The notes under the pieces: generated by a model
Database searches by the model: none
Told to the model about the DNA's origin: nothing
What the model saw: the letters and a program-made list of their open reading frames with translations, nothing else
Shown: positions 4,342 through 32,372 of the stretch, one piece after another
How the letters are laid out: each line of letters opens with the position of its first letter
How positions within the stretch are numbered: the stretch's first letter is position 1
IMG/VR virus record: IMGVR_UViG_3300033153_013547
Span: 1 to 64,000 of that record
Direction: 5' to 3' (one strand)
DNA: 64,000 bases
Translations under genes and position numbers: made by a program

Positions 4342-4542
4342 CTATTCATCATCACAACTGTATAAGATCACAATACGTAGAACAGACACGGGTGATGAGC
4401 CTTCTGTTGATATATCTATGTGAGAACAAATAATATTCATAGGATCACCAATAACTTCTGACATTTCTTTCTCTACTGCCTCTATTTCGTCAGAAGTATT
4501 GGATGCTCCTAACACTACCGTGTTTGCAAATATCTTTATCAA
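4342..4542 (-). CDS. hypothetical protein
   Basis: 66-aa ORF overlapping the upstream stop codon. Confidence 0.5.
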   Translation of the reverse strand: MIKIFANTVVLGASNTSDEIEAVEKEMSEVIGDPMNIICSHIDISTEGSSPVSVLRIVILYSCDDE

Positions 4543-5306
4543 TTTTCTGCCTCCAAAAGATCAAACTTTATACCAGCCTGATCAAATAACATTCTACTCA
4601 TAGCAAAGTTGTAATCATTACGTATGTAATCCCCATCTACCTTTTGTGCCACAACTCTACATACTCCTGCTTGCACTATTGCAGTAGCACACTCTTTGCA
4701 GGGAGTGCCACAGCTTATGTACATAGTAGTACCAACAGTAGATACCCCAGTTCTTGCAGCATTATAGATAGCATTTCTTTCAGCATGAGCATCTACTATG
4801 TATTTGACACATTCACCACTTGCACAACCAAGCAAACGTCTAGGTTCTTCTGGTCTTTCTGCTAAGGACAAAGTTGCCACAGACTTCATGATTGCATCTT
4901 TTGTTGTTTCTGATATATCCAAATCACGTAGTAAGGAACTGGTATAGTTGGCAAATATGCTTGCTGGATGTAATCCTTTATCTCTAAAACTTTTAAGTAT
5001 TCCCAAAAGCTCTGCATTGTCCAAATGAAGATAGGGCAATAGCCTATCTATATTATGCTGTATACAAAACTGTTTGAGAATTTTCCAATATGTTTCTATA
5101 TCATAGTGACATAGATTATCAACCTCATTGACACCCCTTGGAATACCATTCCATCCTATACTCACAATGGTATCTGATAACTTGTTATCTTGTGTCTGAT
5201 ATCTTACCAACACAGCCCCAATGTGTCTGTTGCTAACTTTTGAATTTGCTGCTACATTAACAGCAAGCTTCATATACATCTTGTCTTTTTTTGTTGGCAC
5301 ATACAT
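4539..5306 (-). CDS. dCMP deaminase with a large helical insertion
   Basis: IGAVLV, SIGWNG.PRG, HAERNAI and PCKECA zinc motifs. Confidence 0.9.
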   Translation of the reverse strand: MYVPTKKDKMYMKLAVNVAANSKVSNRHIGAVLVRYQTQDNKLSDTIVSIGWNGIPRGVNEVDNLCHYDIETYWKILKQFCIQHNIDRLLPYLHLDNAELLGILKSFRDKGLHPASIFANYTSSLLRDLDISETTKDAIMKSVATLSLAERPEEPRRLLGCASGECVKYIVDAHAERNAIYNAARTGVSTVGTTMYISCGTPCKECATAIVQAGVCRVVAQKVDGDYIRNDYNFAMSRMLFDQAGIKFDLLEAEN

Positions 5307-5657: not shown

Positions 5658-6725
5658 CTATAATTTATTTGAAACATAAAATAAAAAGTCTTCTGACTCT
5701 GAACAATCATCACATGGAGTAGGTAAAGAAAATGCTGGGAGAAATCTACAGACAACCATCAATACTGTTTTCATGCATGCAGGAATAGACAAACCAAGAA
5801 GTCCCCTCTCTAACATATATGAATATACAAGATGATTCTGAAATATCCTGTCTTTCATCTCAAAATGACTATCAAGTAAGGCTAATAATTGCCCTATTGT
5901 TGCAATTATCTTTTGATCAGTAATCCCAAACATATTTAGATATTTACCTAGATCAAGACTATGCAACACATAAGGACATCTATAGACAGGGGAAATCTGG
6001 ATACTGTTTGGCATGGCTGCAGCTATATGCAATAACAGATTAGACATATCAGTAGGAGCATCTGAAACAATTACAGACATATGTTGTAATATTTGATCAG
6101 CAACTCCTGTAATTTCACTCATAGGGAGCATGCATGACATAAATGCATGATCCGTATATGGTGCAACAGTAGCAGTAAACATAAAACGAGAACGTAATGG
6201 TGGCTCTATCATCAGATCTAAGGAACCATCTGCTCTTTCTCTCAACAACAAGTTATAGCAAGCATGCAATAAATGTGTATCACAATCTGATGATGAACAA
6301 GAATACACATTTCTTCCTTCTTTGTCTAATGATGTGGCAACCAATCTTGCACCACAAACACAATGATCAAGATCTAGAGGGGCTGATTTCTTAGTTTTCT
6401 TGAAGTCATACCTAACAGTATGCATTCTTGATCCAATCAAGTCTGGGAAAATATCTACACTTTTCAGTGCATCTATAGAAAAACCTATTTCGTTAGTCTT
6501 ACGACCGAATACTATTGTCTTACTTTTCAAAAAACACCTAACAGCAATAGAACCTATACTATAATAATAAACAAGTTCCCACGTGGTTCCAGTAAAACAG
6601 CCCCTTTTTTTATCTATCTCTTCAAGACTATCAATGATATCTGAGCTCATAATCCATGACACTTTTTCACCAAATATGTCAGTAAGATTAGGAGTTGTTG
6701 TGGTAGCAGGTAGTTCTTGTGTCAT
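5658..6725 (-). CDS. hypothetical Cys-rich (putative zinc-binding) protein at the end of the ubiquitin-like operon
   Basis: HCVCG...YSCSSSDC...HAC and C-terminal CM..C..PCDDC. Confidence 0.65.
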   Translation of the reverse strand: MTQELPATTTTPNLTDIFGEKVSWIMSSDIIDSLEEIDKKRGCFTGTTWELVYYYSIGSIAVRCFLKSKTIVFGRKTNEIGFSIDALKSVDIFPDLIGSRMHTVRYDFKKTKKSAPLDLDHCVCGARLVATSLDKEGRNVYSCSSSDCDTHLLHACYNLLLRERADGSLDLMIEPPLRSRFMFTATVAPYTDHAFMSCMLPMSEITGVADQILQHMSVIVSDAPTDMSNLLLHIAAAMPNSIQISPVYRCPYVLHSLDLGKYLNMFGITDQKIIATIGQLLALLDSHFEMKDRIFQNHLVYSYMLERGLLGLSIPACMKTVLMVVCRFLPAFSLPTPCDDCSESEDFLFYVSNKL

Positions 6726-6730
6726 TACTT

Positions 6731-7783
6731 CTATTTCTCAACCCCATTTTTACTGAATTTGCTAAAATTACCACGTTTCTTCAGATAATCAATACTTGCA
6801 ACTTCCTTAGAATAATTGTTTGCTACATCAAACCTCACCATCATAGTACTAAGTCCTGATGCCTTAAGATCTGCTTTGATCACAGACATTAGAAAATTCA
6901 TAATAGGTGGCACAGCAGTACTATTTACAAACAAAGACTGAGCTTCCTGGGCAGCCATGTTAGCACATGTTAAATCCTCAGTATCCTCATCTGTCATATC
7001 ACCAAATAAATCAAAAAATGTTGGTGTTCCTATGGAACAGGGAATAATAGTACCCTTTACATCAGTTAGATCAACTTCAGCTATAGGTTTATTTGGTGCA
7101 GTACATTTACCTATTACTTTCTTCAATTCACCATTCTTGGACAAAATAGTCTTGACTTCATCAAGACCATATCCTCCACCACCAACTGTTAGTATAACCT
7201 GTCCGTCAAACCTATTATTGCCAGAATCAATCCATACAGCAAATGGATTGACTTCATCAAGGTAGGATTGAATGATCTTCCTTGCACTGATCTTATCAAC
7301 ACAGCCTATTATAATAGTAGCATACTTGGGAGAGTTATTACACAATGCTTTTATATCATTAGCACTTTCTATGTATCTATCATAACTAGAAATAGAAATC
7401 CCAAGTGCTCTAGAGTATCTTGCAGCCAAAACTTGAGCCTTGTTTTTATCAACATCTGGCATGATGAAATTTTGCCGTCCAACATTCTTGGGTTCTACCA
7501 CATCTCCATCAACTAAAACCAAGTTGATTGATGCTTGATGAACACTGGAAAGAAACCCCCCTCCCTGTATCATAGAAATTAGCCTTGCAATTTCAGGTAC
7601 AAGTTTGCTACCAGTACCACCACAACCAACCACAATGATATTGGCAAAATAAAGATCATTTGTCCTGCATGAAACAGGAACAAATGGCTTTATTTTCATA
7701 GCCAACATTCCGTTATTAATATTGGTGCATAATGCATCTATAACATCATGGTTATTTTTTGGTGCTTCTTTCTTAGCAGACAA
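6731..7783 (-). CDS. PRTRC-type ThiF/E1 ubiquitin-activating-like enzyme
   Basis: VVGCGGTGS, VDGDVVEPKNVGRQNF, NKAQVLA.RY, IIGCVD..SAR, WIDSGN..FDGQV, LTCA...QSLFVN (catalytic Cys region). Confidence 0.92.
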   Translation of the reverse strand: MSAKKEAPKNNHDVIDALCTNINNGMLAMKIKPFVPVSCRTNDLYFANIIVVGCGGTGSKLVPEIARLISMIQGGGFLSSVHQASINLVLVDGDVVEPKNVGRQNFIMPDVDKNKAQVLAARYSRALGISISSYDRYIESANDIKALCNNSPKYATIIIGCVDKISARKIIQSYLDEVNPFAVWIDSGNNRFDGQVILTVGGGGYGLDEVKTILSKNGELKKVIGKCTAPNKPIAEVDLTDVKGTIIPCSIGTPTFFDLFGDMTDEDTEDLTCANMAAQEAQSLFVNSTAVPPIMNFLMSVIKADLKASGLSTMMVRFDVANNYSKEVASIDYLKKRGNFSKFSKNGVEK

Positions 7784-7801
7784 TTATGGCCTCCTTAGAC
7801 A

Positions 7802-8941
7802 CTATACCCCAGTATCTGTTACATGTAATATTTTAGACAATGCTTCTCTATCCTTTGGACTCATTTTATGCTCTAAAAGGGCAAAAGCCAATTCCATTGC
7901 TTCAGACCTTTCCATAAATTCATTAAGACTATAAGCAAACACCTTGATCTTGTCTAGATCAAGAGAAGCAACATCATGAGCCAGCAAAACAGGAGTACCT
8001 CTATTCTTGTATTTCTCAAAACTATTTTGTTGCTTCCAATATCTATCTAACAAACCAATTGCTTTATTATCTTTTGATAAACTTGTTGCTTGATCATTTG
8101 CCTTACTGTCCATCTGACGATCAAAATATCCATGGTGACCACTGACTACTGTGGCTTCGCCCTTGGTAACCCAAGCCTGAGGATAAGTGTCATCCATAGG
8201 TGGTCTATCGTCAAATATGTCCAAAAGATCCACAGATATTGCCTTACCACCTACCATAACGCGCAATCTTAGTTCGGGTTCTGGCAACATCACTCGACCT
8301 ATGACTCCATAAATTATATCATTTTTCTCGTCACTATCATCTATTCCACTCCAAAAAGCTCCCATTGAAGCAGTATGGCTATGAATTTCCATAACCTTTG
8401 GATACTTTCTGTTTAGCTCAGCCAAAGGTGGATCATCATAAACAATTGATCCACCAGATGCACTATGCTCTGGAACATGCATCATATATGATTCATTATC
8501 CTTATCATAATACACAAAAACAATAGCTTCAATGTGAGGAACAGATCTGAAATATGCTAGAGTTTTAGCTAATATTGTCTGAGGCAACTTGGGTATACAG
8601 AGCTGGAAAAACTTATCTGGCATTTCCACATCAGCAATACGAAGTGACTCACTAGGGACACCAAATATACCAATCAAATTCTTCCTAATCGTGAATATAC
8701 CATTAGCAGCAACAATGTAGCTTATTTGTTTAGTAATTTGGTCCATAGTAGGAACACCAAATATGAGATCAGTCATACCAATCTTGAATTTGGTGTTTTT
8801 GCTAATCTTTCCAAATAAGATATTGGCAAACCCACTATTATTCTGTTTCATGGGCACCTGCTTCTTTACTTTATCAGACATTAAAAATTCCTCCAACAGT
8901 ATTTTTTGCAACATAGAGATCATTATAGGGAAATGGCTCAT
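7802..8941 (-). CDS. prokaryotic JAB/MPN metallopeptidase (PRTRC protein A-like); real start probably ATG 8881
   Basis: YIVAANGIF, upstream Glu (IEA), EIHSH...AFWSGIDDSDE...IYGVIGR. Confidence 0.88.
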   Translation of the reverse strand: MSHFPIMISMLQKILLEEFLMSDKVKKQVPMKQNNSGFANILFGKISKNTKFKIGMTDLIFGVPTMDQITKQISYIVAANGIFTIRKNLIGIFGVPSESLRIADVEMPDKFFQLCIPKLPQTILAKTLAYFRSVPHIEAIVFVYYDKDNESYMMHVPEHSASGGSIVYDDPPLAELNRKYPKVMEIHSHTASMGAFWSGIDDSDEKNDIIYGVIGRVMLPEPELRLRVMVGGKAISVDLLDIFDDRPPMDDTYPQAWVTKGEATVVSGHHGYFDRQMDSKANDQATSLSKDNKAIGLLDRYWKQQNSFEKYKNRGTPVLLAHDVASLDLDKIKVFAYSLNEFMERSEAMELAFALLEHKMSPKDREALSKILHVTDTGV

Positions 8942-9659
8942 CTGTCACTTTAGCCATATCTTTAAACACATGCTGAATATTAGATGGATCAGTATATGAA
9001 GTAGTGATATCTTTATAATGAAGCGTAAGCCTATTATAGACCAAGTCACAGTTAAAAGCACTTGTTATAAACGATATCAACCTATCACCCACTTCGTATA
9101 GTTCGTAAGTAGTTTTAGGTATCTTAACACTACCCCAACATATACCACCATGATTAAATACATTGCCAAAAGGAAACATATACATCTTAGATTCTGGAGT
9201 AATTGGTTGTTTAGTTACATAGATTGACTCTTTTATGATCGTCTTTGTAGCAATATTATACTCTACTATGTAAAGCAAACTTGGCCACCTAATAACATAA
9301 GATTGAATATTATTGTAGTTCTGAAAAGTAATAGGCATCACTGTCTCTGGTCGGACTATACCAATCTTAGTACTTGATGCCCCTACAGCCACAAACTTGC
9401 AACCAGAGGGCAACAAAGGAAGGCTATAAGTATGAAACTTACCAAAAAATTCTAACAGAGCAGAAGTATAAACTACCTTGGTTGTTGACTTACCTGCCCT
9501 ATCCTTGAGGAGCAAACTGGCAATCCCTGGGTTTTTAGAATTCATTCCAATAATTATATCATAATCAGGGCTAAGTGTTCCTAAATGATCATGGACAGTC
9601 AACTTTCCCATCAAGGACTCTATTTCTTTATCCATTGCTTCATTTGTTTTTCTTGTCAT
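8874..9659 (-). CDS. prokaryotic E2 family D (PRTRC protein B-like)
   Basis: LPLLP..C, WPSLLY, PFGNVFNHGGICWGS (catalytic Cys), S.FN.DL. Confidence 0.85.
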   Translation of the reverse strand: MTRKTNEAMDKEIESLMGKLTVHDHLGTLSPDYDIIIGMNSKNPGIASLLLKDRAGKSTTKVVYTSALLEFFGKFHTYSLPLLPSGCKFVAVGASSTKIGIVRPETVMPITFQNYNNIQSYVIRWPSLLYIVEYNIATKTIIKESIYVTKQPITPESKMYMFPFGNVFNHGGICWGSVKIPKTTYELYEVGDRLISFITSAFNCDLVYNRLTLHYKDITTSYTDPSNIQHVFKDMAKVTDEPFPYNDLYVAKNTVGGIFNV

Positions 9660-10245
9660 GTTTCCTGTTACCTTTTAACATACGTAATAACGTAGATAAG
9701 ATTGTTACAAACATCATAAACATAGGCCAAATATTATCAGATTTAGACACAGTCAATGTTATAATAACCTTAGGATATGCTGAGCCAATGAAATAATGAC
9801 ATATTTCTCCTCCCTCTCTCCACAACTTTATGGTGGTGCCACTATACACTCTTGTATCTTTACTCAACTTAGAATACCACCATCTTTTTACCAGTTCAGC
9901 ATCCTCAGTAGCATGAAATGCAAAAGACACCACCAATCTCTGTGATCTATTACCAAACACATTTGCTGTAATAGAATCCTCAGGCAAAATACTATCATAT
10001 TTGGAAGATGATACAACACTCTTGACAGACCCAATGAGAATATTTATAACTGAGATTATATTATTTGCAAAATCAGATCCCTCAAAGATTGCATTGCCTC
10101 CACGTACTAATTCATCAGCAATGACAGAATCATCAATATCAAGATCATTTTTCATATAATACAAACAAGTTGATAACAATAATAACGAACGAATTGCATA
10201 AGACCGCTGATCCCTTGAAGTTTCCATGATATTACTAAACGACAT
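9640..10245 (-). CDS. hypothetical protein within the ubiquitin-like operon
   Basis: 201-aa ORF with GGAGG RBS. Confidence 0.7.
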   Translation of the reverse strand: MSFSNIMETSRDQRSYAIRSLLLLSTCLYYMKNDLDIDDSVIADELVRGGNAIFEGSDFANNIISVINILIGSVKSVVSSSKYDSILPEDSITANVFGNRSQRLVVSFAFHATEDAELVKRWWYSKLSKDTRVYSGTTIKLWREGGEICHYFIGSAYPKVIITLTVSKSDNIWPMFMMFVTILSTLLRMLKGNRKHDKKNK

Positions 10246-10263
10246 AGATAAACTTCCTCCTAA

Positions 10264-10587
10264 CTAAAAATAATCTGGACATAATATAGGATCAGATGCA
10301 AGAGTAGTAGATAGTCTTTTAAACAAAGACGGATTGTCTAGGGGCTCAGTATCTAAGAACTGATCTATTACTGAATAGTCTGAAGAGGAAGCAACAAATT
10401 TCCACAACCATTCATTATTATCTCTTCCCAACCTTGTTGCAAGATTAATCAAACGATTGATAATATTAGGATTTGCTGGGAAATGCTCAATATAAGGAAT
10501 TAGGGTAATTAGCATTACAATCTCAGGGGCTATTGATGGCATAGCCTCAAGCATAGACAACTTATCTGAGATATCATTGTTATTCAT
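10264..10587 (-). CDS. hypothetical helical protein within the ubiquitin-like operon
   Basis: 107-aa ORF. Confidence 0.65.
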   Translation of the reverse strand: MNNNDISDKLSMLEAMPSIAPEIVMLITLIPYIEHFPANPNIINRLINLATRLGRDNNEWLWKFVASSSDYSVIDQFLDTEPLDNPSLFKRLSTTLASDPILCPDYF

Positions 10588-10592
10588 GACAA

Positions 10593-10895
10593 TTACCCTT
10601 TTGTCCCTGCAGTTTGATCAGCAGCCCATATATTGGCTCCTTCCTCTGTCTTTGTAAGCCTACTGTTACTAACACCAGGGAAATCTTCCTTAAAATAATC
10701 ACGTATTTCCTGCTCTGTTTTCAAATCTGCTGGAAAATAATGTTTCTCTGCATTGATATAGCAAACACCAACATCCATTTTTGGTGCACCTGCCTGAACA
10801 AAGGTATCATCAGCATCAGTACTTGCATCAGTACTTACATTATTACCCAAACTGATGCTGGGTATGTCAGAATCTCTTTCTCTTTTCTCATTCAT
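10593..10895 (-). CDS. prokaryotic ubiquitin-like protein (PRTRC protein C / Prok_Ub-like)
   Basis: EQEIRDYFKEDFPGVSN...AGTKG-COOH; the terminal GTKG is the PRTRC-C signature; GGAGG RBS; first gene of the E2/JAB/E1 cluster. Confidence 0.8.
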   Translation of the reverse strand: MNEKRERDSDIPSISLGNNVSTDASTDADDTFVQAGAPKMDVGVCYINAEKHYFPADLKTEQEIRDYFKEDFPGVSNSRLTKTEEGANIWAADQTAGTKG

Positions 10896-15842: not shown

Positions 15843-16277
15843 TCATCCTCGCACCTCCAGCAATTCGGGATTATCGTGGATGTTGCCGATGATTTTCCAC
15901 CAGTTCTGACGCTTTATCATGTCGGTCTCGTCCCAATCGGCAAAAGCCATAGTGTCAAAGTATTTATGGTCATCAACACACTCAAGGGCAAATTGGGCAT
16001 TGCGATACACGACCACCAAGCATGGACGCTTTAGGTCTGTTTCGAGCATATCCCCCTCCCATATTTCGCTGCCGTCTCGGTCGCAGAGTCCGGTGTATTG
16101 GCCGACGGTTTCGGAGTCTACGGGAGTAAAATACCCCTTCATTATGTGCCAGACAACAGGCGGGGATTGAGATGGCCGAGTGCGACATATCAAATGTTCT
16201 CCGCCAAGTTCAACATAAAACCCATAAATCCACTCGCCATTATCAACGCGCTTACCTCTAAACTCACGCCTATCCAT
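15843..16277 (-). CDS. YopX-family protein
   Basis: REFRGKRVDNGEWIYG, TVGQYTGL.D..G.EIWEGD, IIGNIHDNPELLE. Confidence 0.92.
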   Translation of the reverse strand: MDRREFRGKRVDNGEWIYGFYVELGGEHLICRTRPSQSPPVVWHIMKGYFTPVDSETVGQYTGLCDRDGSEIWEGDMLETDLKRPCLVVVYRNAQFALECVDDHKYFDTMAFADWDETDMIKRQNWWKIIGNIHDNPELLEVRG

Positions 16278-18607
16278 TACATACCTCTCTTGCCTAGTGG
16301 CACAGTAGTAAACTTGTTTCCATCCATATAACCACGAGATATAGAGAATTTGTTTCCATTTTTGCTTCTACCCCTGAAATCTACTGTTACTATGTCTCCT
16401 TCCACAATATCGTTAGAAACTATTGCTCCGGCGACAACGTTAGTTATATCTTTCTGGATCGTTCTCCGCAAAGGACGAGCACCGAATGCTGCATCGTATC
16501 CCCTTTCTGCTAACTCCCTGCAAGCATTGTCAGTAACAACAAGCTTAATTTCTTGTTCAGCCAATCTCTCTACAAGTTTATCAACTTGCAAACAAGTAAT
16601 ATCAATAGCATGTTCCCTTGTCAATGGGTGAAAAACAATGACCTCATCAATCCTATTCAGGAACTCAGGTCTTAGTATTGTTTTCAACCTATTTTTGACT
16701 TTGTTCACCATGATAGGATAACCATCAGCCAATTGCCTATCATTTTTGCCCATTGAAAACTCAGCAATTTCACTAGAAGCAATGTTACTGGTCATAACCA
16801 TTACTACATTTCTAAAATTAACTGTTACACCATGAGAATCAGTAAGCCTACCATCATCTAATACCTGTAATAATACATTCCAGACATCAGGGTGTGCTTT
16901 TTCTATTTCATCAAATAACACAATGCTGTATGGCTTCCTTCTAACTGCTTCTGTTAGTTGCCCACCATTATCATATCCAACATAACCTGGGGGTGATCCA
17001 ACAAGCCTTGTTGCAGAAAACCTTTCTCCATACTCACTCATATCTATTCTAACAACAGCGTCCCTGTTGTTGAATAGAAAGCCTGCTAAAACCTTTACAA
17101 GTTCAGTTTTCCCTACACCTGTTGGTCCACAGAACAGAAAACTACCAAGAGGTCTATCAGGATCTGACAATTTTGCTTTTGCCCTACGAATAGTCTCTGA
17201 CACAGCAGAAACTGCTTGAACCTGTCCAATCAGTTCTTTGTGTAACTCATCTTCCATGTGGATATATTTGTCACTTTCCTCAACAGAAAGGTTGGTCAAA
17301 GGAATTCCAGTCCACATGGAAACAACTTCTGCTATATCTTCTATACCAACAATGCTATCTTCTCTTATGTTTTCAGAATGATCAATCTTGACTCTCGAAC
17401 AAGCCTCATCAAGCAGATCAATAGCCTTATCTGGCAAAAATCTGCCCGTTACATAACGAGCTGATAGCTCTGCTGCTGCCTTTATTGCCTGAGAATCTAC
17501 TACTACTCCATGGTGATTTTCATACTTAGACACTATTCCATTTAATATTTCTTCTGTCTGTTCAATGCTTGGTTCATCTACAGAAATAGGTTGAAACCTT
17601 CTCTCCAGAGCAGCATCCTTTTCTATATGCTTTCTATACTCGTCAGCAGTAGTAGCACCAATACATTGTAACTCACCACGAGCAAGCACTGGTTTCAACA
17701 TGCTTGCAGCATCAACACCACCATCGCCAGCACCCATGGAAGCCAGGCTGTGTATTTCATCTATAAATAAAATAATTTGACGATTTTTGGATCTAATTTC
17801 ACTGATAATAACCTTGAGTCTCCTCTCAAGTTCTCCTCTCATAGAACTTCCAGCCATCAATCCCCCAAGATCAAGAGATAGAATCTTCTTGTTAGCCAAC
17901 ATGGGTGCTGTACCTTCAGCTATTCTTATAGCAAGTCCTTCAACTATTGCTGTTTTGCCTGTACCAGGCTTGCCAATCAAAACAGGGTTATTTTTGAATC
18001 TTCTAACCAATATTTGTATAGCCCTGTCCATTTCTTGTGTTCTACCAATGATAGGATCTATCTCTCCTCTTAGAGCCTTATCAGTAAGATCTGTTGTAAA
18101 TATTTCAAGCAGATTATCCTGATCATCATCCTTATTCACATCTTTTGTAACAGCAAACCTGTTTTGCATTTTAGCAAAAGATTTTTCTACCTGTGCTTTG
18201 CTAATTCCCAAGGTATTTCTGAATGATGCTCCATGAGTACGATCCATAAGTAGAGCCAAAAATACGTGATCAACTCGAATATTGTTGCTGTGGTTATTGT
18301 TCATGTATTTTTCTGCACGCTTGAAAATACTTACCACTTTTGGAGAAAAGAACACATCACTTGGGGCAAAAGATTCATCAGTACCCTCATTATCAATAAG
18401 TGTAGATGCAACTTCTATTACATCTTTAGCATTTACACCCATTTCACGAAGCATTGCCATAGCTTCTGAATCTTCCACAGATATGAGTCCATACAATAAG
18501 TCTTTTGGGAACATCTGATTCAAGCCTAACTCAGCAAGTTGAGTCTTGCTGATTCCTATGGCTTTGACAAGTTTGTCAGCAAACAATTGCCAATCAAGTT
18601 TGTACAT
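16277..18607 (-). CDS. Clp/Hsp100 AAA+ ATPase (ClpB/ClpC-like, no middle domain)
   Basis: Clp-N repeats; NBD1 GKPGTGKT and LFIDEIH; RFLPDKAIDLLDEA; NBD2 GPTGVGKT; GYVGY pore loop; GARPLRR. Confidence 0.96.
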   Translation of the reverse strand: MYKLDWQLFADKLVKAIGISKTQLAELGLNQMFPKDLLYGLISVEDSEAMAMLREMGVNAKDVIEVASTLIDNEGTDESFAPSDVFFSPKVVSIFKRAEKYMNNNHSNNIRVDHVFLALLMDRTHGASFRNTLGISKAQVEKSFAKMQNRFAVTKDVNKDDDQDNLLEIFTTDLTDKALRGEIDPIIGRTQEMDRAIQILVRRFKNNPVLIGKPGTGKTAIVEGLAIRIAEGTAPMLANKKILSLDLGGLMAGSSMRGELERRLKVIISEIRSKNRQIILFIDEIHSLASMGAGDGGVDAASMLKPVLARGELQCIGATTADEYRKHIEKDAALERRFQPISVDEPSIEQTEEILNGIVSKYENHHGVVVDSQAIKAAAELSARYVTGRFLPDKAIDLLDEACSRVKIDHSENIREDSIVGIEDIAEVVSMWTGIPLTNLSVEESDKYIHMEDELHKELIGQVQAVSAVSETIRRAKAKLSDPDRPLGSFLFCGPTGVGKTELVKVLAGFLFNNRDAVVRIDMSEYGERFSATRLVGSPPGYVGYDNGGQLTEAVRRKPYSIVLFDEIEKAHPDVWNVLLQVLDDGRLTDSHGVTVNFRNVVMVMTSNIASSEIAEFSMGKNDRQLADGYPIMVNKVKNRLKTILRPEFLNRIDEVIVFHPLTREHAIDITCLQVDKLVERLAEQEIKLVVTDNACRELAERGYDAAFGARPLRRTIQKDITNVVAGAIVSNDIVEGDIVTVDFRGRSKNGNKFSISRGYMDGNKFTTVPLGKRGM

Positions 18608-22432: not shown

Positions 22433-24094
22433 CTAATAATCAAGATCAACTACTATATCATCCTTCTCTGACTCTAACATTTTCTTTACATGTCGATCAA
22501 TAAGATCTTCACTAAATTTTTCTTTTTCTTCCAGAACATTATACACATGATGTTCTATGCTTTCCTGACCATCTTGGAGAACTGTTTTCAACATATAATA
22601 ACTAACTCTGTTGAGCTGTCCTGGTCTATGAAATCTTGCCAAAAATTGGGACCAACTTCCCATTCTAAAATTAGCACCATAGATCACAACAGTATTACAA
22701 CAAACAAGATTGATACTCTCACCAGCATCTATTTGCATTACCAGAAACTGATTGCCATTAGGATCTTGAAAATCAGATATAACATTTGTTGCTTCTTGTG
22801 CTGTAAGACCACCATATAATTTGTTGCAGTTTAGTTTATCAGCCAATTCTTCCACTGTTTTTCTAAAGTGAGCTGCCACAACAACTTTGTTGCCAGATTC
22901 TTTAGCAGAATCCACAATATCCAGCAGAAATTCTAACTTGGCAGAATCCTCTATGCTTTGTCCAGCAGCAATACCATCACATATTTGCATAAGATCCATA
23001 TTATTTGATGGTTTGTGTTCAGCAGCAAGCACAGCACACTTAGTTACATAAAGATCATTAAGCCTTTTGCTTGCCATACAATCAATAGGAATAAATAATT
23101 GTTCAGGTAAATCCAAGCACTGATCTTTTGTAAATCTGATACCATAATCAAATAATATAGATCTTAGCTCTGGTATGTTTTTGAACCCTACCAGAACTTT
23201 ATGCCTATGAGGTCTATACCTTTGGACCATAACACAATATTTTTGGGTAAATTGCCAATAACTTTTACCTAATATATTTTTGTCAAGAAATGACAACTGA
23301 CCATACAGATCCATATACTTACTTACAACAGGAGTGCCTGTCATAAGCATTTTATATGGAGCCTTTAGTCTTCTGATAGTTTCAGCATAACTTAGCTTCT
23401 TACCTTTGGTTCTAATTTTGTAATTCTTGATATGATGAGCTTCATCTATTATAATCATATCAAAAGTGTCAAATGCACCAAAACCTATACCATCAGCAGG
23501 AACATAACCTGCTGATTCATAGTTAGTAATATAAAACAATGCATCTTTTTTGAAGGCTGCTTGTTTTTGCTGTGGAGAACCAGATGCTATAGAATAACTA
23601 TGAAACCTTTCAGGCAACCACTTCTCAATTTCTTTTACCCAGGTCTCAATCATTGCTTTTTTGGGTGAGAAGATCAATACTTTATGGACAGCACCTTGCT
23701 CTACCCTATATTTTACAATTTCAAGAACAACCCTTGTTTTTGCAGTGCCTTGTTCAGCAAAAATAGCACTCTTGCTTTTTAGCAAGCAAAACTGATACAT
23801 AATATTCTGATGATCAAAAGCAGGAGGATCACCTTCAATCACTGGCTTATTGTGATCTAAGTGATATGTGATTTCAAAAAGATCTTCATCAAGGTAATTT
23901 GCTAATTTTTCTTTTGCCCATTCACATTTAGCAATAGGAAGATACCAATATTTACCAACAGGCTCATATCTGGCTTTTATGGACTTCATAACTGAAATAT
24001 ACTCATCAGCCCAGGGAAAATACATGACACATCTATCTTCATCTGGAACAATTGTAAGTCCAAACCTGTCCTTAGGCAGGGGAATGCTAATCAT
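22433..24094 (-). CDS. SNF2-family helicase with an N-terminal HARP-like domain
   Basis: AEQGTAKT, NYE, IIIDEAH.IKN, MTGTP, ESINL, QFLARFHRPGQ. Confidence 0.9.
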   Translation of the reverse strand: MISIPLPKDRFGLTIVPDEDRCVMYFPWADEYISVMKSIKARYEPVGKYWYLPIAKCEWAKEKLANYLDEDLFEITYHLDHNKPVIEGDPPAFDHQNIMYQFCLLKSKSAIFAEQGTAKTRVVLEIVKYRVEQGAVHKVLIFSPKKAMIETWVKEIEKWLPERFHSYSIASGSPQQKQAAFKKDALFYITNYESAGYVPADGIGFGAFDTFDMIIIDEAHHIKNYKIRTKGKKLSYAETIRRLKAPYKMLMTGTPVVSKYMDLYGQLSFLDKNILGKSYWQFTQKYCVMVQRYRPHRHKVLVGFKNIPELRSILFDYGIRFTKDQCLDLPEQLFIPIDCMASKRLNDLYVTKCAVLAAEHKPSNNMDLMQICDGIAAGQSIEDSAKLEFLLDIVDSAKESGNKVVVAAHFRKTVEELADKLNCNKLYGGLTAQEATNVISDFQDPNGNQFLVMQIDAGESINLVCCNTVVIYGANFRMGSWSQFLARFHRPGQLNRVSYYMLKTVLQDGQESIEHHVYNVLEEKEKFSEDLIDRHVKKMLESEKDDIVVDLDY

Positions 24095-25763
24095 TGATCT
24101 GATTCCTTGCTATAGCAGCCTCTTTATACTTAGGAGGCAATATTTTTGCATATTCTGATAGTGCTTCTAATCCTGTTACATATTTAGACATATACATCAA
24201 GACATCTGGCACATCATATAACGTTGATAGAATCATTATATCTGCTAATCCTAATCTTACACCACTCATCTCTCTAAGATCAGGAGACATAACTCTAGCA
24301 GGACCTGTGGCTGACAAACTATCAACAGCATGATTGTTTTGCCTAGTCATGAACACAAGACCATTGATACAATCAATTTCTTGCCCTTTATGAAATACCT
24401 TAGGACAATCTATTTCAGCAATCTTGCTTATACTATACTCACCAGTAAATTGCCTCACAAATAACCTTTTACCTGGGGCAATTCTATGAGATAGGACAGC
24501 TTCTATGAGCTGTCCATAATTTCTTCTGCCCTTATCTGGACCCTTGTAGATGGAAAATGGGTTGATGATCATGTCAATTCTCCTGCCCAGATCATCCACA
24601 GGCATCCAGTCATCAGGCATGATCTTCACAGTGCCTTTTTGACCACTTCTGTTAGACAATTTATCTCCATCTTCTAACTTGTAAGCAATAAATAGTTCAA
24701 TAGAAACAACCTTATGAATAGAATTCATATATGGTTTTTCTATTTCACTCACTTTATCAACAAATGCAAATGTATTAGCATCATAAAAATGTGCTTTGCA
24801 TTCGTTTTCACTATATGCACCTGCATAGGTGCATAATTGCTGACCATGTTCTACTATTTCTCCAGGTTTTACTAAGGAACTTGTGTTATGCCACATAAGA
24901 GACTTTCTCTTGAAACAACAAAATTTACCAGCAACTGATCTTGATACAACAATAGTGTCTTCAAATGTTTCTGCTATTGAAAAGAATGCTACTCTAACAT
25001 TCAGTCCAGGTGGATCAGGTATATGTCCTGTATCTGCTGTGGTAATTAAGGGTAACTCACTATGAACCAAATCAGTAGCATGTAACATGTTAGAAACAAT
25101 TATTGGTATTCTTCCTAAATTTGTATGTTCTATAAAGGGAATTTTCCTACTAACCTTAGAAAGCCTTCTACTATTAGATGGATCATTATTGTTATCCACC
25201 AAGAAATTAACTAGTCCTATCTTGTCTCCCATACTTGTAGCCAGAGTGTCTAAAATCTTTATAGATTGTATCCCTACTCTAAAATCATAATCTTGTGAAG
25301 GAGCAAGATTCTTTTCAGAATGAACCAAGACTCTATCCTTCATAACTGCTCTGTACAAAGCATTACCATAACCAAGAGGCTCAGTATTGATAGACATGTC
25401 TAGCATTGATTGAAACATGGATGGCCTTATGTCATATCCAAATTTGAGCCTATTCATGTTAAAATCTCCTACAGCTCTTGCCAATCTCATTTCTGCATAT
25501 TGTACTGGATCTACTAATATTCCTCCTATAAAATGAAACATAGGAATTCTAGACACACCATTATGTACTATATGTCCATCATCATACAATCTTGGTATGA
25601 TCAAAGTAACATTTAGTTCTGCATAATTAAATGATGCTAACGCTTTATCTTCTTCTTCCAGAATCTTGATATCAGATGAGCCAACAAAAATTTTGGGCAG
25701 AGAATATGGATTTACCAGGTATCTATGTTTTATACTCATATGCCCCTCCCCTGGTTTTGCCAT
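24087..25763 (-). CDS. RNA polymerase beta-like subunit (highly reduced)
   Basis: IPRLYDDGHIVHNG, IPFIEH, FEDTIVVS, GDKLSNRSGQKGTV, MP...GRRIDMIINP, GVRLG. Confidence 0.9.
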   Translation of the reverse strand: MAKPGEGHMSIKHRYLVNPYSLPKIFVGSSDIKILEEEDKALASFNYAELNVTLIIPRLYDDGHIVHNGVSRIPMFHFIGGILVDPVQYAEMRLARAVGDFNMNRLKFGYDIRPSMFQSMLDMSINTEPLGYGNALYRAVMKDRVLVHSEKNLAPSQDYDFRVGIQSIKILDTLATSMGDKIGLVNFLVDNNNDPSNSRRLSKVSRKIPFIEHTNLGRIPIIVSNMLHATDLVHSELPLITTADTGHIPDPPGLNVRVAFFSIAETFEDTIVVSRSVAGKFCCFKRKSLMWHNTSSLVKPGEIVEHGQQLCTYAGAYSENECKAHFYDANTFAFVDKVSEIEKPYMNSIHKVVSIELFIAYKLEDGDKLSNRSGQKGTVKIMPDDWMPVDDLGRRIDMIINPFSIYKGPDKGRRNYGQLIEAVLSHRIAPGKRLFVRQFTGEYSISKIAEIDCPKVFHKGQEIDCINGLVFMTRQNNHAVDSLSATGPARVMSPDLREMSGVRLGLADIMILSTLYDVPDVLMYMSKYVTGLEALSEYAKILPPKYKEAAIARNQIND

Positions 25764-27390
25764 TTTCTGCCAAAAATTCTTCTGTTAGGCATCTGCAGAA
25801 AACATTTTTTCCATTGATTGATACAGGCCATGCATTATAATCACATCCTACACATAGATCAGGCATCCATGCTTTTCCAAAGCATGGTGGGACATCTTCA
25901 GACAATTCAGGGAAAAATGCAAACTCAGGATCAATTACTCTGGCAAATTCAAGTGTTTCTGGACAACATCCTGAGTTATTGATCATAACGAGTGTGAAAA
26001 AGAGACCAAGTGCTGATGCAGGATTAGTTGAAGCATACAAATCATAGATTTCCTCAGGATTTCCTCCTGCCATGCAGAAAGGACGTATAGTTCCCACACC
26101 ATCCTTTACATCTTTCTGTCTAGCTGTTAATATTAAATCACAGAATGTACTAACTTCTTTTCTTGTAAGACTATCAGAAAATGCTTGCATTAGCAAATTT
26201 ATTGTCTCATCTTTGGTGTCTGCACACAATTTACGTACAGCAGAACAAATATTGAATATGTTTATTAATCTGCCATGCTTGCTGTGTAAATTAGTCTGTG
26301 AAATAGTTTCACAGACTTTTGCAACTTGACTTGCTCTTGTATCATTTATTTCAAGCAAATTCATGGTGTCTAGCCACAATTGTCCTGCTGATCCCATACC
26401 TATCTTCAATTGTATATTGGCAGACTGAACTGATGTTCTTTCTGCATAGAATTTTTCAATATTCAAAACCCCATCTTTATACAAAGAATCCTGTATATCT
26501 GATAGTTTTAGTGATCTACCATGAAAACTATCTGCCATTTCTATAAACTGATCCTTCATAGACTTATCTACGGGAGGATTTACCTCAGAAAACTCATTGA
26601 TATACAATACATGGGTATCCAAATAGTTTTCGTATAGCAATTCTTCTTTTGTACGTTTATGAAGGTTCTGTGGTAGACGAATTATACATAATCCATCACC
26701 ATCAAAATCACAAGCCAAGCCATTATTAATTGCAGGATGGATCTTAATACATCTTCCTTCCACTGGAATCATCCTGCAACCTATGATGCTGTCCCTATGC
26801 AAGACTGGATTCCTCAATAGGAGACCTATATCCCCCTCTTTAGCATCAATCTTTTTCATCAGTCCTATAGGAACACCAACTTCAGATTTCTCAGGATCAA
26901 GATCTAATGAAGTGGCAGCTATAGCTCTTCCACTAAATGGCATTCTTAGCCCCATAATATATCTGGCAAATATACCAGATTTTCCTACAATTGCTTCTGT
27001 TAATTTCTTTTGTAATCTAGTAACTGCTCTTTGCATAGAGTCACTGGTAAAATTCTTGTAAACAATAAGTTTTACAATCCCATCATAAGCTGCTGTCACA
27101 CCATTTATTATGTAATACAATCCTGTAATATCCACTGTACTTGGTCTAAGGTGTATAGGTATGACATATATTCTATCTACCACTGATCCAAAAAATCTGC
27201 AGAATATTTGATGATCATCACTATCCTTAGGCAACATAATATAACGACCCTTAGTAAATAAATCCGGGTCCATTACTGTACCAGTCGGATCGTACTCATG
27301 AAATGGAACAATAGATGAATAACCGCCAACTAATTCACGCATTATTACCTTCTTTACCAAAAATAACATGAAGATATTCACATGGCACAA
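25723..27390 (-). CDS. RNA polymerase beta'-like subunit (highly reduced); start probably ATG 27342
   Basis: VIPIHLRP, GKSGIFA..IMGLRMPFSGRAI, LLRNPVLHR.SI, catalytic ACDFDGD, trigger-loop-like ETISQTNLHSKHG. Confidence 0.92.
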   Translation of the reverse strand: MCHVNIFMLFLVKKVIMRELVGGYSSIVPFHEYDPTGTVMDPDLFTKGRYIMLPKDSDDHQIFCRFFGSVVDRIYVIPIHLRPSTVDITGLYYIINGVTAAYDGIVKLIVYKNFTSDSMQRAVTRLQKKLTEAIVGKSGIFARYIMGLRMPFSGRAIAATSLDLDPEKSEVGVPIGLMKKIDAKEGDIGLLLRNPVLHRDSIIGCRMIPVEGRCIKIHPAINNGLACDFDGDGLCIIRLPQNLHKRTKEELLYENYLDTHVLYINEFSEVNPPVDKSMKDQFIEMADSFHGRSLKLSDIQDSLYKDGVLNIEKFYAERTSVQSANIQLKIGMGSAGQLWLDTMNLLEINDTRASQVAKVCETISQTNLHSKHGRLINIFNICSAVRKLCADTKDETINLLMQAFSDSLTRKEVSTFCDLILTARQKDVKDGVGTIRPFCMAGGNPEEIYDLYASTNPASALGLFFTLVMINNSGCCPETLEFARVIDPEFAFFPELSEDVPPCFGKAWMPDLCVGCDYNAWPVSINGKNVFCRCLTEEFLAENGKTRGGAYEYKT

Positions 27391-30910: not shown

Positions 30911-31285
30911 TCAATTTTCGTGCGAATTCAAAACTTGGCAGGCATGTCGCCCAAAGTCCTTTATAATGTTTACTATTTCTCTAGCTTCACTCAAGCAATA
31001 AGAAGTAAGGCTATCTAAGGGTAGGTGTCCTCCATAGAATTTGCCTCTTGTTGCAATATCTTTCCAATAACCTGAATAAGACAGGCATTGGAAAATAATT
31101 TGCACCAAGGTCTCAGGTCCATCATAATCTTGATAGGTAACAACAACAATCAGTGCCATCCTTTCAGCAGCAAAAATTGTAGACTGATATTCATTGTCAC
31201 CTGTTTTTTCCCACTCCAATTGATTAGACTTCTTCACCATAAAAGACTTTCCTTCTGTCTTTCTCTTCTTGAAACTCAAGAACAA
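30911..31285 (-). CDS. hypothetical protein, paralog of 30572..30901
   Basis: As above; start probably ~31240. Confidence 0.65.
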   Translation of the reverse strand: MFLSFKKRKTEGKSFMVKKSNQLEWEKTGDNEYQSTIFAAERMALIVVVTYQDYDGPETLVQIIFQCLSYSGYWKDIATRGKFYGGHLPLDSLTSYCLSEAREIVNIIKDFGRHACQVLNSHEN

Positions 31286-32372
31286 TATCTATAAGATCAT
31301 TGGTCTCAATTAGACCTATGACATGTTTAATTTTACATGCTCTTATCCATTCATAAGCAGATGATATTTGTTCCTTACGCAAACAAAACAAAGCACCAGA
31401 ATAGGGGTAATTCATTGCCTCAAAAGCAAATTCCTTATCTTCTTTTATCATTTCAATAGAATGATAAGTTTCTTCTATATCTGCTACTAAATCTGCTATT
31501 CTTTGTCTTACAAGATCAAAGGCTACTGCCAATCCAGGAAAAAACAAGGCAAGATCATCACTATTTCCCTTGATCACTAAATCTATGATATCTTTTAAGG
31601 ACAAATTGTTCTTAATCCTTGTACCTCTTATGTAGCTTAGTGTTTTGAATTTCAGCCTGTTGAAGTTTTTATCTACAGCAACAAATCCTTCTGCCTGAGT
31701 TCCCATGATATTTTCACAGGCTGTTATTACACCTTCAGTAGTTCTAATATTCTTGTGTAATTTGACACATTCCCAACCAAATGTATTGGCAGCAGTATCA
31801 GGTAATTGTTCTAAATAAGGGTAGCCATGAGACATTTTTCTCACCCCATGAAGAACTATACGTGATCCTTTGTGCCTTACAAGCACTATATTAGCTGGAG
31901 TCATCAATTCAAACATGTAAGTAAATCCAGGCACAGGTAGTTTGTAACCAAGAGTTTTCCATGTTTCCCAGAACAATTCTTCAAAAGTTATTTCCCAACC
32001 TAAAACTCTTCCTCGTGCATCAGCCATACCTAAAGTGCTAACATTCCATTGATCATTGTAATACCACAAGCAAACCATTGATCCATCTACTTTTTCATAG
32101 ATGGAAACATTATTCCAGTCTAGTGCAACAGCATTAGGTTCCCCATAATTGAAGAATTTTCTGTAAGGAAAACAAACAGGCAACCAATCATTGTCTGCAT
32201 CTAACACTATACCTCTGGCATCTTGAACTACAGGATTTTCCATTGGGGAGTGAAGCGTATGATATTTAAACAAATACAGATTAGGAAATATAGAGTGTAT
32301 ATTATGCATTATTCCTAACTCATCAAGTTTATCTAAACCATGATGTCTAATAAAATTGACTATTTCTATCAT
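31224..32372 (-). CDS. T4 Rnl1-like RNA ligase
   Basis: ARGIVLD, PYRKFFNYGE, EKVDGS, TYMFEL, EGFV, RLKFK. Confidence 0.92.
   Translation of the reverse strand: MIEIVNFIRHHGLDKLDELGIMHNIHSIFPNLYLFKYHTLHSPMENPVVQDARGIVLDADNDWLPVCFPYRKFFNYGEPNAVALDWNNVSIYEKVDGSMVCLWYYNDQWNVSTLGMADARGRVLGWEITFEELFWETWKTLGYKLPVPGFTYMFELMTPANIVLVRHKGSRIVLHGVRKMSHGYPYLEQLPDTAANTFGWECVKLHKNIRTTEGVITACENIMGTQAEGFVAVDKNFNRLKFKTLSYIRGTRIKNNLSLKDIIDLVIKGNSDDLALFFPGLAVAFDLVRQRIADLVADIEETYHSIEMIKEDKEFAFEAMNYPYSGALFCLRKEQISSAYEWIRACKIKHVIGLIETNDLIDIVLEFQEEKDRRKVFYGEEV

What the first reader, a model, noticed from the sequence alone, without database searches (positions are those of the whole stretch)
5658..10895. Complete phage-encoded ubiquitin-like conjugation operon (Ub, ?, ?, E2, JAB, E1, Zn protein)
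Seen: a contiguous operon with a Ub-like protein ending in AGTKG (C-terminal Gly already exposed, preceded by a ~40-aa acidic disordered extension), E2-D with GGICWG, JAB with HSH...S..D, and E1 with an intact nucleotide-binding loop and LTC catalytic Cys. Established: these correspond to PRTRC proteins C, B, A and ThiF, normally found on plasmids or ICEs beside ParB, with unknown substrates. Here there is no ParB. Two unassigned ORFs (9640-10245, 10264-10587) sit between Ub and E2, and a 355-aa Cys-rich protein follows E1. Inference: these are candidate substrate adaptors, E3-like factors or targets in a phage-specific variant.
Basis: partly seen in the sequence, partly recalled or inferred. 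Interest (0 to 1): 0.75.

Follow-up and report, generated by a model that had tools for sequence, protein, structure and literature searches.

The report
Jumbo-phage ubiquitin-like conjugation operon
An uncultured 261-kb tailed phage carries a real but very divergent copy of a bacterial ubiquitin-like tagging gene set (small tag, E2, removing protease, E1) that is common in large phages and has never been studied at the bench, so it is a good lead rather than a new kind of system.

Summary
On the minus strand, 6731-10895 encodes a ubiquitin-like protein (Ubl) ending in Lys-Gly, two unassigned proteins, a Prok-E2_D E2, a JAB metalloprotease and a ThiF-type E1. Catalytic residues are intact in all three enzymes. 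The Ubl models as a beta-grasp.

It belongs to the "6d"/PRTRC operon kind predicted in 2006, but it is not a canonical member. All three enzyme genes score below the curated PRTRC cut-offs. PRTRC E, F and ParB are absent. The family's E2 histidine motif FTHPN is replaced by FNxDL.

It is not a one-off. At least 109 IMG/VR contigs and 12 isolated phages encode relatives of the E1, and the sampled loci keep the E2-JAB-E1 order. Ralstonia phage Dina is already annotated with a ParB-less PRTRC set.

- **ORF after the Ubl (X, 107 aa):** it fills a conserved slot. Proteins in that slot end in aromatic + aliphatic residues (here PDYF), which is strongly enriched.
- **Next ORF (Y, 201 aa):** it fills a positional slot but has no detectable relative anywhere.
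- **355-aa Cys-rich protein:** it is also an ORFan. No related locus has it, so nothing ties it to the system.

Most likely mechanism: an E1-to-E2 thioester relay that attaches the Ubl to protein lysines, with JAB as trimming and removing enzyme. Targets are unknown. This is a new variant of a known kind, of moderate interest.

The parts
10593..10895 (-). Ubiquitin-like modifier, 100 aa. A disordered acidic N-terminal extension (residues 1-40) is followed by a beta-grasp domain (41-93) and a flexible tail ending AGTKG-stop, so the C-terminal Gly is already exposed. GGAGG lies 7 nt upstream of the ATG.
10264..10587 (-). Protein X, 107 aa, ends PDYF. It occupies the slot of small proteins that, in related phage operons, end in aromatic + aliphatic residues, often preceded by Asp.
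   Evidence: Enrichment: 26 of 44 against 17 of 597, Fisher p 2e-23, 18 BLAST-unlinked groups. A leave-one-out profile does not find it, so the assignment rests on position and motif.
9640..10245 (-). Protein Y, 201 aa (a gene caller starts it at residue 7, coordinate 10227). It is the positional counterpart of the variable 130-560-aa protein between the Ubl and E2 in relatives, and of PRTRC protein F. It is an ORFan with a hydrophobic C-terminal helix followed by a basic tail.
   Evidence: no homologue by BLAST, HMM, HHalign or a search of 1.84 billion representatives.
8874..9659 (-). E2-like conjugating enzyme, 261 aa. An extra N-terminal beta/alpha module precedes a UBC-like domain (residues 76-250). 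Catalytic Cys174 lies in GGICWG. The downstream motif is FNCDL.
7802..8941 (-). JAB/MPN+ metalloprotease with the family's N-terminal alpha+beta domain and a C-terminal extension of about 140 aa. The likely true start is the Met at 8881, which overlaps the E2 stop by 8 nt.
6731..7783 (-). ThiF-type E1 adenylating enzyme, 350 aa. It has the GCGGTG nucleotide loop, the Mg/ATP residues and Cys273 (LTC). An insertion of about 50 aa (residues about 205-255) is absent from relatives.
5658..6725 (-). Adjacent 355-aa Cys-rich ORFan (13 Cys; CxC-x18-Cx4C at residues 122-148), starting 5 nt after the E1 stop. It is listed because the finding includes it. It is not shown to belong to the system.

Best explanation
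The operon is a divergent, phage-borne version of the prokaryotic '6d'/PRTRC ubiquitin-like system. It most likely works as a protein-tagging cascade, in these steps.

1. The E1 (6731-7783) binds ATP and adenylates the free C-terminal Gly100 of the Ubl, then takes it as a thioester on Cys273.
2. The Ubl passes to Cys174 of the E2 (8874-9659).
3. The E2 transfers it to a lysine on a target protein.
4. The JAB metalloprotease (7802-8941) cuts after the Lys-Gly end. It removes the tag from targets, and in relatives whose Ubl is made as a tandem repeat or with a tail, it matures the precursor.

X and Y fill a fast-evolving two-gene slot between the Ubl and E2. They are the best candidates for specificity factors or first substrates. 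X probably docks through its C-terminal Asp-aromatic-aliphatic end. The target and the benefit to the phage are unknown.

Shown: gene content, fold models, intact catalytic residues and conservation across many phages. Inferred: every chemical step, the roles of X and Y, and the existence of protein targets.
For: Family assignment and intact active sites are given. The Ubl models as a beta-grasp and the E2 as a UBC-like fold.

The invariant exposed Lys-Gly end argues that a free Gly carboxylate is what the system uses. Isolated phages also encode head-to-tail poly-Ubl precursors, each unit ending in Lys-Gly: Bacillus phage vB_BauM_KLEB27-3 has 4 units and Vibrio phage D69 has 3, and IMG/VR contigs L037 and L082 have 5 each. 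This also argues that a protease cuts exactly there.

A separate E2 with an invariant Cys is retained in 81 ORFs across the sampled loci. That is not needed for sulfur transfer.

The order Ubl, two variable genes, E2, JAB, E1 recurs in unrelated phages.

The operon type was predicted to conjugate a Ubl by Iyer et al. 2006 (PMC1779556).

In Salmonella phage Arash, virion-prep mass spectrometry re-annotated the E1 and E2 homologues as detected proteins. The numbering in the paper and in GenBank may differ.

A 2026 preprint reports a diversity-generating retroelement aimed at PRTRC protein B in a prophage. That fits the E2 acting as a recognition surface.
Against: - No biochemical evidence exists for any member of this operon kind. 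A 2026 paper says the cassette's function has not been studied.
- The 'absolutely conserved' E2 histidine described for type 6d is missing here (FNCDL).
- There is no solved structure of any family member.
- Structural matches are only Z 5-6.
- X is not recognised by a profile of the other X proteins, and Y has no relatives. Their membership is positional.
- In a jumbo phage almost all genes are co-directional and tightly packed, so adjacency is weak evidence. The promoter/terminator scan was no better than shuffles.
Confidence: 0.6

Rival explanations
1. It is a sulfur-carrier module. The E1 adenylates the Ubl, which is converted to a thiocarboxylate and donates sulfur to a cofactor or to a modified nucleotide of the phage. 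JAB only trims the carrier, as in the CysO/Mec+ and ThiS/MoaD systems, and no protein is tagged.
For: The E1 also matches the ThiF and MoeB families. The Ubl model also resembles MoaD (6jc0). The neighbours are nucleotide-metabolism genes: dCMP deaminase, SbcCD and ligases.
Against: No rhodanese domain is fused to the E1, and the Pfam/NCBIfam scans of the operon and its immediate neighbours found no desulfurase. A separate E2 with an invariant Cys is kept throughout the family. Poly-Ubl precursors and a dedicated JAB with extra domains look like a tagging system.
Confidence: 0.12
2. Its main job is counter-defence. The JAB strips host ubiquitin-like tags (Bil-type or CBASS Cap2-type) from phage or host proteins, or the cascade tags and disables host defence proteins. 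The rapidly changing X, Y and E2 surfaces would then reflect an arms race.
For: X and Y diverge extremely fast beside conserved enzymes. A retroelement diversifies PRTRC protein B in a prophage. Host Ubl-based defences exist. The E1 shows weak similarity to CBASS E1-E2 and BilD models.
Against: No experiment supports it and no known anti-defence family matches. The same kind of operon sits on plasmids and ICEs beside ParB, where a phage-versus-host role is less obvious. This rival concerns the biological role and is compatible with the conjugation mechanism above.
Confidence: 0.15
3. It is a partition or maintenance cassette, as the name ParB-related ThiF-related cassette and some genome papers assume.
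For: Canonical loci sit beside ParB on plasmids. One paper calls it a partitioning cassette.
Against: No ParB_N is found anywhere in this genome. None of the 80 viral loci analysed needed ParB to keep the operon. Nothing in E1/E2/JAB chemistry suggests DNA segregation.
Confidence: 0.04
4. The 355-aa Cys-rich protein is the E3-like or zinc-binding specificity factor of the operon.
For: It starts 5 nt after the E1 stop. It has a CxC...Cx4C cluster that could bind zinc.
Against: It has no homologue in 5.8 billion proteins, in 80 related loci or in its own genome. The gene after E1 differs in every relative: a 460-aa basic protein, a 61-aa protein, a reverse transcriptase and others. The language-model structure is unconfident, pLDDT 0.32.
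Confidence: 0.1

Closest known systems
PRTRC cassette (TIGR03734-03742), which is operon type '6d' of Iyer, Burroughs and Aravind 2006 (PMC1779556)
   Same: The same four core families occur in the same order (Ubl, E2 of Pfam Prok-E2_D, JAB with an N-terminal alpha+beta domain, ThiF-type E1). The Ubl has the same xGxKG end. A variable protein sits between the Ubl and E2.
   Different: It scores below all curated cut-offs. Proteins E and F and ParB are absent. The E2 motif FTHPN is replaced by FNxDL. There is an extra small protein X with a conserved C-terminal end. JAB and E1 are larger. It lies outside the canonical clade in the E1 tree. The carrier is a jumbo phage rather than a plasmid or ICE.
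PRTRC-like operons of isolated phages: Ralstonia phage Dina, Bacillus phages vB_BauM_KLEB27-3, Edson and vB_BceM_WH1, Vibrio phages D69, D181 and D148, Salmonella phage Arash, Acinetobacter phage ME3
   Same: They are phage-borne, have no ParB beside the operon in the stretches read, and keep the E2-JAB-E1 core. KLEB27-3 has the same Ubl-X-Y-E2-JAB-E1 order as the window.
   Different: E1 identity is only 23-40%. Dina is canonical (E-C-F-B-A-ThiF). D69 and Arash have the order Ubl-Y-X. KLEB27-3 and D69 make poly-Ubl precursors, whereas the window makes a single Ubl with an acidic N-terminal extension.
Bil (BilABCD) anti-phage ubiquitin-like system
   Same: It has the same four roles (Ubl, E2, JAB-type deubiquitinase, E1). 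The BilA Ubl is among the structural matches (8tyz_B).
   Different: It is host-encoded defence and uses different E1 and E2 families. Only a weak BilD hit was found, E 0.001. Bil E1 carries an N-terminal Pfam14459 domain.
Type II CBASS Cap2/Cap3 and the Bub operons
   Same: They use an E1-E2 thioester relay with a JAB or other protease. Cap2, CdnG-E2 and BubB are among the E2 fold matches. CBASS E1-E2 models give weak E1 hits.
   Different: In CBASS the E1 and E2 are fused and the 'tag' is the C-terminus of the cyclase, with no free Ubl. Bub uses other E2 and protease families.
ThiF-ThiS and MoeB-MoaD sulfur-carrier pairs
   Same: They share the E1 adenylation fold and residues, and a beta-grasp carrier with a C-terminal Gly.
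   Different: Those pairs have no E2 and no dedicated JAB. Here an E2 with an invariant Cys is always present.

Membership tests
PRTRC / operon type 6d | ThiF-family E1 that meets the PRTRC_ThiF model (TIGR03736) | tested here: not met
   It is the best hit, but at 109.7 bits against a cut-off of 144.75. A metagenomic relative, L007, does pass at 155.7 bits.
PRTRC / operon type 6d | E2-like protein of Pfam Prok-E2_D with a conserved catalytic Cys | tested here: met
   PF14460 scores 35.6 bits against a cut-off of 25. Cys174 is invariant. The model has a UBC-like fold. The narrower PRTRC_B model is not met: 32.8 against 131.45.
PRTRC / operon type 6d | Conserved His downstream of the E2 Cys (FTHPN), described as absolutely conserved in 6d | tested here: not met
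   The window has FNCDL. The phage clades share FNxDL, with N203, D205 and L206 nearly invariant.
PRTRC / operon type 6d | JAB metalloprotease with Glu, HxH, Ser and Asp, plus the JAB-N domain | tested here: met
   E...HSH...S..D are conserved. The N-terminal NG.F...R block aligns with canonical PRTRC_A. The PRTRC_A model scores 48.8 against a cut-off of 101.8, so it is not an equivalog.
PRTRC / operon type 6d | Small beta-grasp protein with a conserved C-terminal Gly (PRTRC_C) | tested here: met
   It aligns with the annotated PRTRC_C of a Paraburkholderia plasmid and of phage Dina, sharing xGxKG. The model is a beta-grasp. No library model hits it.
PRTRC / operon type 6d | Alpha-helical protein F between the Ubl and E2 | tested here: inconclusive
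   A protein (Y) sits in that position, but HHalign, HMM and BLAST show no similarity to F. No confident structure is available.
PRTRC / operon type 6d | PRTRC protein E and the ParB-family protein next to the cassette | tested here: not met
   The operon proteins give no NCBIfam hits to E or ParB. No ParB_N is found in the whole genome.
Bil / CBASS Cap2-Cap3 defence systems | Match to the PADLOC models of the system's proteins | tested here: not met
   Only weak E1-domain hits were found (best 7.2e-8; BilD 0.001). The E2, JAB and Ubl give no hits.
Functional Ubl conjugation cascade | E1~Ubl and E2~Ubl thioesters and Ubl-lysine isopeptides are formed | not testable with these tools
   This needs biochemistry. 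Only the catalytic residues and fold models were checked.

The most novel reading that the evidence does not exclude
Large phages carry a eukaryote-like ubiquitin toolkit of their own. It would consist of a polyubiquitin-style precursor or a ready-made Ubl, a conserved E1-E2-JAB engine, and a hypervariable pair of cassette proteins (X and Y). X and Y would plug into the engine through X's conserved Asp-aromatic-aliphatic C-terminus and choose which host or phage proteins get tagged during infection. That would be a phage-side counterpart of the host's Bil and CBASS ubiquitin-like defences.
Probability: 0.25. Interest if true: 0.8.

Novelty: new variant of a known kind. Interest (0 to 1): 0.55.

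Why it matters
Ubiquitin-like conjugation in bacteria has recently become an active field through host defence systems (Bil, Bub, CBASS Cap2/3). The 6d/PRTRC operon predicted in 2006 still has no known function.

This work shows that a distinct, ParB-less version is widespread in large phages. It has intact catalytic sites, polyubiquitin-like precursors in some cultured phages, and a fast-evolving accessory slot.

The question therefore becomes directly testable in cultured phages: Salmonella phage Arash, Vibrio phage D69 and Bacillus phage vB_BauM_KLEB27-3. If the system tags host or phage proteins, it would be the first virus-of-bacteria ubiquitin-like conjugation pathway.

The window's own copy is one more very divergent member, not a new kind.

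Tried and rejected
- **Complex prediction.** E1 + E2 + JAB(1-250) + X, with X as the partner, gave 'no answer' (ipSAE 0.00). This is no evidence either way.
- **DNA and single-protein searches.** A DNA search of the operon against isolated phages found nothing. A single-protein scan of viral contigs with the E1 found nothing. A 14-sequence alignment was too diverse to scan with. A 6-sequence alignment worked.
- **PHROGs.** There were no hits for any of the seven proteins.
- **Single-sequence word search with the Ubl.** It found only itself.
- **Y.** The language-model atlas gave no usable feature hit and a low-confidence model. The exhaustive HMMER search found only itself. BLAST clustering, iterated HMMs and HHalign against PRTRC_F and against the Y proteins of other classes were all negative.
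- **355-aa protein.** The atlas gave nothing. The word search found only itself. There is no paralogue and no homologue in the related loci. The weak Pfam hit to ElaD/SseL_N (E 0.089) was dismissed as noise.
- **X.** A leave-one-out profile does not recover the window's X.
- **Foldseek against the PDB.** It gave no significant hits for either model. The exhaustive aligner gave consistent but modest matches.
- **Promoter/terminator scan.** It was no better than shuffled sequence.
- **Conserved neighbours.** An AAA+ protease 5 kb away was considered as a possible 'proteasome' partner. Neither it nor any other neighbour is conserved in related loci.
- **Terminase models.** PF03237, PF17289 and phrog_2 found nothing in the genome. 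Phage identity was instead confirmed by a tail sheath.
- **Read laying.** It showed only short, low-depth fragments in two metagenomes and gave no expression data.

Full report
**What is there**

The window is the first 64 kb of a 261,124-bp IMG/VR virus record with direct terminal repeats. It encodes SbcCD, a split RNA polymerase beta subunit, several ligases and helicases, two tRNAs and, outside the window, a tail sheath (E 1.5e-47). It is therefore a contractile-tailed jumbo phage. It is remote from every isolated phage: the operon DNA finds nothing, and the polymerase subunit has one weak hit. Near-identical short fragments occur in hydrothermal-vent and sediment metagenomes.

All genes in the region lie on the minus strand with gaps or overlaps of a few bases. 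In order of transcription they are:
- Ubl, 10593-10895
- X, 10264-10587
- Y, 9640-10245
- E2, 8874-9659
- JAB, 7802-8941
- E1, 6731-7783
- a 355-aa Cys-rich protein, 5658-6725

**The four core genes are real**

- **E2.** It passes Pfam's threshold for Prok-E2_D (35.6 bits against 25).
- **E1.** It passes the ThiF threshold and is best matched by PRTRC_ThiF (E 1.4e-31).
- **JAB.** It is best matched by PRTRC_A (E 5.9e-13).
- **Leave-one-out test.** Profiles built from phage relatives without the window's sequences each pick out the window's gene as the only hit among 1501 ORFs of the genome. The E-values are 1e-7 for the Ubl, 1e-28 for the E2 and 1e-51 for the JAB.

The catalytic residues are intact:
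- E1 has GCGGTG, D92, D94, N100, R103, Q104, K115, D163 and Cys273.
- E2 has Cys174 in GGICWG.
- JAB has Glu, His-Ser-His, Ser and Asp.

With a 26-sequence alignment, AlphaFold2 gives beta-beta-alpha-beta-beta for residues 41-93 at pLDDT 83-88. The first 40 residues are disordered. An exhaustive structural comparison returns ubiquitin, ISG15, Fubi, SUMO, FAT10, MoaD and the bacterial BilA Ubl as almost all of the top 50 matches (Z 4.5-5.8). The terminal Lys-Gly is invariant.

The E2 model (pLDDT 82) has a UBC/UEV/RWD-like domain at residues 76-250. Its matches include the bacterial BubB, CdnG-E2 and Cap2. These Z-scores are modest. The weight comes from the uniformity of the matches and from the sequence evidence.

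**What it belongs to**

The gene set is the operon type that Iyer, Burroughs and Aravind predicted in 2006 as type '6d'. That type comprises a Ubl with a C-terminal Gly, an E2-like protein, a JAB with an extra N-terminal domain, an E1-like protein and a rapidly diverging helical protein (PMC1779556). It was later named PRTRC.

A canonical plasmid locus reads ParB-E-C-F-B-A-ThiF. The window differs in several ways:
- Every curated PRTRC model is missed by a wide margin.
- Proteins E and F are not detectable.
- ParB is absent from the whole genome.
- The E2 motif FTHPN is replaced by FNxDL in the window and its phage relatives. The histidine in FTHPN was described as absolutely conserved.
- In an E1 tree the window sits on a long, unresolved branch, outside the well-supported canonical clade (99/97).

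No member of the family has a solved structure detectable by sequence. No known defence-system model matches beyond weak E1 similarity.

**It is common in phages**

Twelve distinct isolated phages (14 records, two of them duplicate accessions) encode relatives of the E1. They are:
- Ralstonia phages Dina and YO105_4
- Burkholderia phage BgVeeders33
- three Bacillus jumbo phages
- three Vibrio phages
- Salmonella phage Arash
- Acinetobacter phage ME3
- one unnamed phage from a human faecal sample

RefSeq already annotates a ParB-less E-C-F-B-A-ThiF set in Dina.

A scan of IMG/VR found 109 contigs with relatives, many of 100-350 kb. In the 80 loci fetched, three main layouts recur:
- **Class A:** Ubl-X-Y-E2-JAB-E1. 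This includes the window, Bacillus phage vB_BauM_KLEB27-3, L016, L017 and L024.
- **Class B:** Ubl-Y-X-E2-JAB-E1. This includes Vibrio phage D69, Salmonella phage Arash and many contigs. It forms a supported clade.
- **Class C:** the canonical Ubl-F-E2-(JAB)-E1.

[quoted passage not shown] No paper in the library deals with the jumbo-phage versions.

**The two unknown ORFs**

A small protein (X) and a larger one (Y) fill the space between the Ubl and E2 in classes A and B.

- **The X motif.** X proteins are too diverse to align well, and they fall into 18 BLAST-unlinked groups. They nevertheless share an extreme C-terminus of aromatic then aliphatic residue, preceded by Asp in 14 of 29 cases. 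Among small ORFs in the three positions before E2, 26 of 44 end this way. Only 17 of 597 small ORFs elsewhere in the same loci do (Fisher p 2e-23).
- **The window's X.** It ends PDYF. A profile of the other X proteins does not detect it, so its assignment rests on position and motif.
- **Y.** It has no detectable relative: not among 1.84 billion representatives, not in the related loci, and not by profile-profile comparison with PRTRC_F or other Y groups. It is a positional counterpart only.
- **Reading.** The combination of conserved enzymes and hypervariable accessory genes suggests specificity factors or substrates under diversifying pressure. A report that a diversity-generating retroelement targets PRTRC protein B in a prophage points the same way. 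This is inference.

**The 355-aa protein**

It has 13 cysteines and a possible zinc-ribbon-like CxC...Cx4C cluster. However:
- It has no homologue in 5.8 billion proteins.
- It has no homologue in any related locus or in its own genome.
- Its model is not confident.
- The gene after E1 differs in every relative.

Tight spacing means little in a genome where everything is tightly spaced. It should not be counted as part of the system.

**Mechanism**

The most likely mechanism is the classical relay: adenylation of Gly100 by the E1, thioester on Cys273, transfer to E2 Cys174, then transfer to a lysine, with JAB reversing the modification.

The strongest comparative argument comes from the relatives. 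Several isolated phages encode the Ubl as head-to-tail repeats, each ending in Lys-Gly, as eukaryotes do with polyubiquitin. Others carry C-terminal extensions after Lys-Gly. A protease must therefore cut precisely there, and the free Gly is what matters.

The main rival is a sulfur-carrier role. It is disfavoured by the universally retained E2 and by the lack of rhodanese or desulfurase partners, but only biochemistry can exclude it. What is tagged, and why a phage needs it, are unknown. Counter-defence and remodelling of phage or host proteins are both open.

A complex prediction aimed at finding X's docking partner gave no answer.

**Verdict**

This is a new, very divergent variant of a known but uncharacterised kind of system. 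The class is more widespread in large phages than the literature records. Interest is moderate. The value lies in the class and its testability in cultured phages, not in this single copy.

Noticed in passing
L013 754-1503 (Bacillus phage vB_BauM_KLEB27-3); L010 2412-3203 (Vibrio phage D69); L037 3619-4725; L082 3262-4353: These are polyubiquitin-like genes with 4, 3, 5 and 5 head-to-tail Ubl units, each ending in Lys-Gly. Locus L024 instead has two separate Ubl genes (4425-4616 and 4690-4875). I found no paper describing this in the library searched.
   Followed up: partly
L014 107-307 (Salmonella phage Arash, OQ632216): A 66-aa Ubl ORF ending RTGTKG is not annotated. The record instead annotates a 72-aa ORF in another frame (gp251c, 102-320). 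In Vibrio phage D69 the E1 gene is annotated only from its middle (L010 6214-6969), with a spurious 90-nt reverse ORF over its start.
   Followed up: partly
L005 8885-9688: A reverse transcriptase (RVT_1) gene overlaps the end of the E1 gene in one metagenomic relative. This is interesting beside the 2026 report of a diversity-generating retroelement aimed at PRTRC protein B.
   Followed up: no
L011 3662-4150; L012 2398-2988; class C loci: Canonical PRTRC protein E, and its positional counterparts upstream of the Ubl, also end in hydrophobic or aromatic residues (SLLS, DLPI, SFFN, TSLF, GWTF, VIEL). Protein E might be the counterpart of X.
   Followed up: no
L007 3808-4305; L012 3001-3390: In one metagenomic locus and in phage Dina, the Ubl continues for 60-90 residues past the Lys-Gly. 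This may be a fused X-like segment that JAB would have to cut off.
   Followed up: no
window 16277-18607 (-): A 776-aa AAA+ 'ATP-dependent protease' (phrog_4871, E 6e-238) lies 5 kb upstream of the operon. It is not a conserved neighbour of the operon in related loci.
   Followed up: partly
window 4539-5306 (-): This is a 255-aa dCMP/cytidine deaminase. Its best NCBIfam hit is 'anti-phage dCTP deaminase' (E 5e-16, far below the cut-off). It has a long insertion between the N-terminal part and the zinc-binding region.
   Followed up: no
window 6731-7783 (-), E1 residues about 205-255: An insertion of about 50 residues (GGGGYGLDEVK...IIPCSI) lies between the adenylation core and the catalytic Cys. 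It is absent from all aligned relatives.
   Followed up: no
window 22433-27390 (-) and 40750-42576, 53642-55312, 31224-32372 (-): This stretch holds split RNA polymerase beta-like genes, a helicase, and both an NAD-dependent and an ATP-dependent DNA ligase plus an RNA ligase in one 64-kb window. GC skew is strongly and uniformly negative across the window, with nearly all genes on the minus strand.
   Followed up: no
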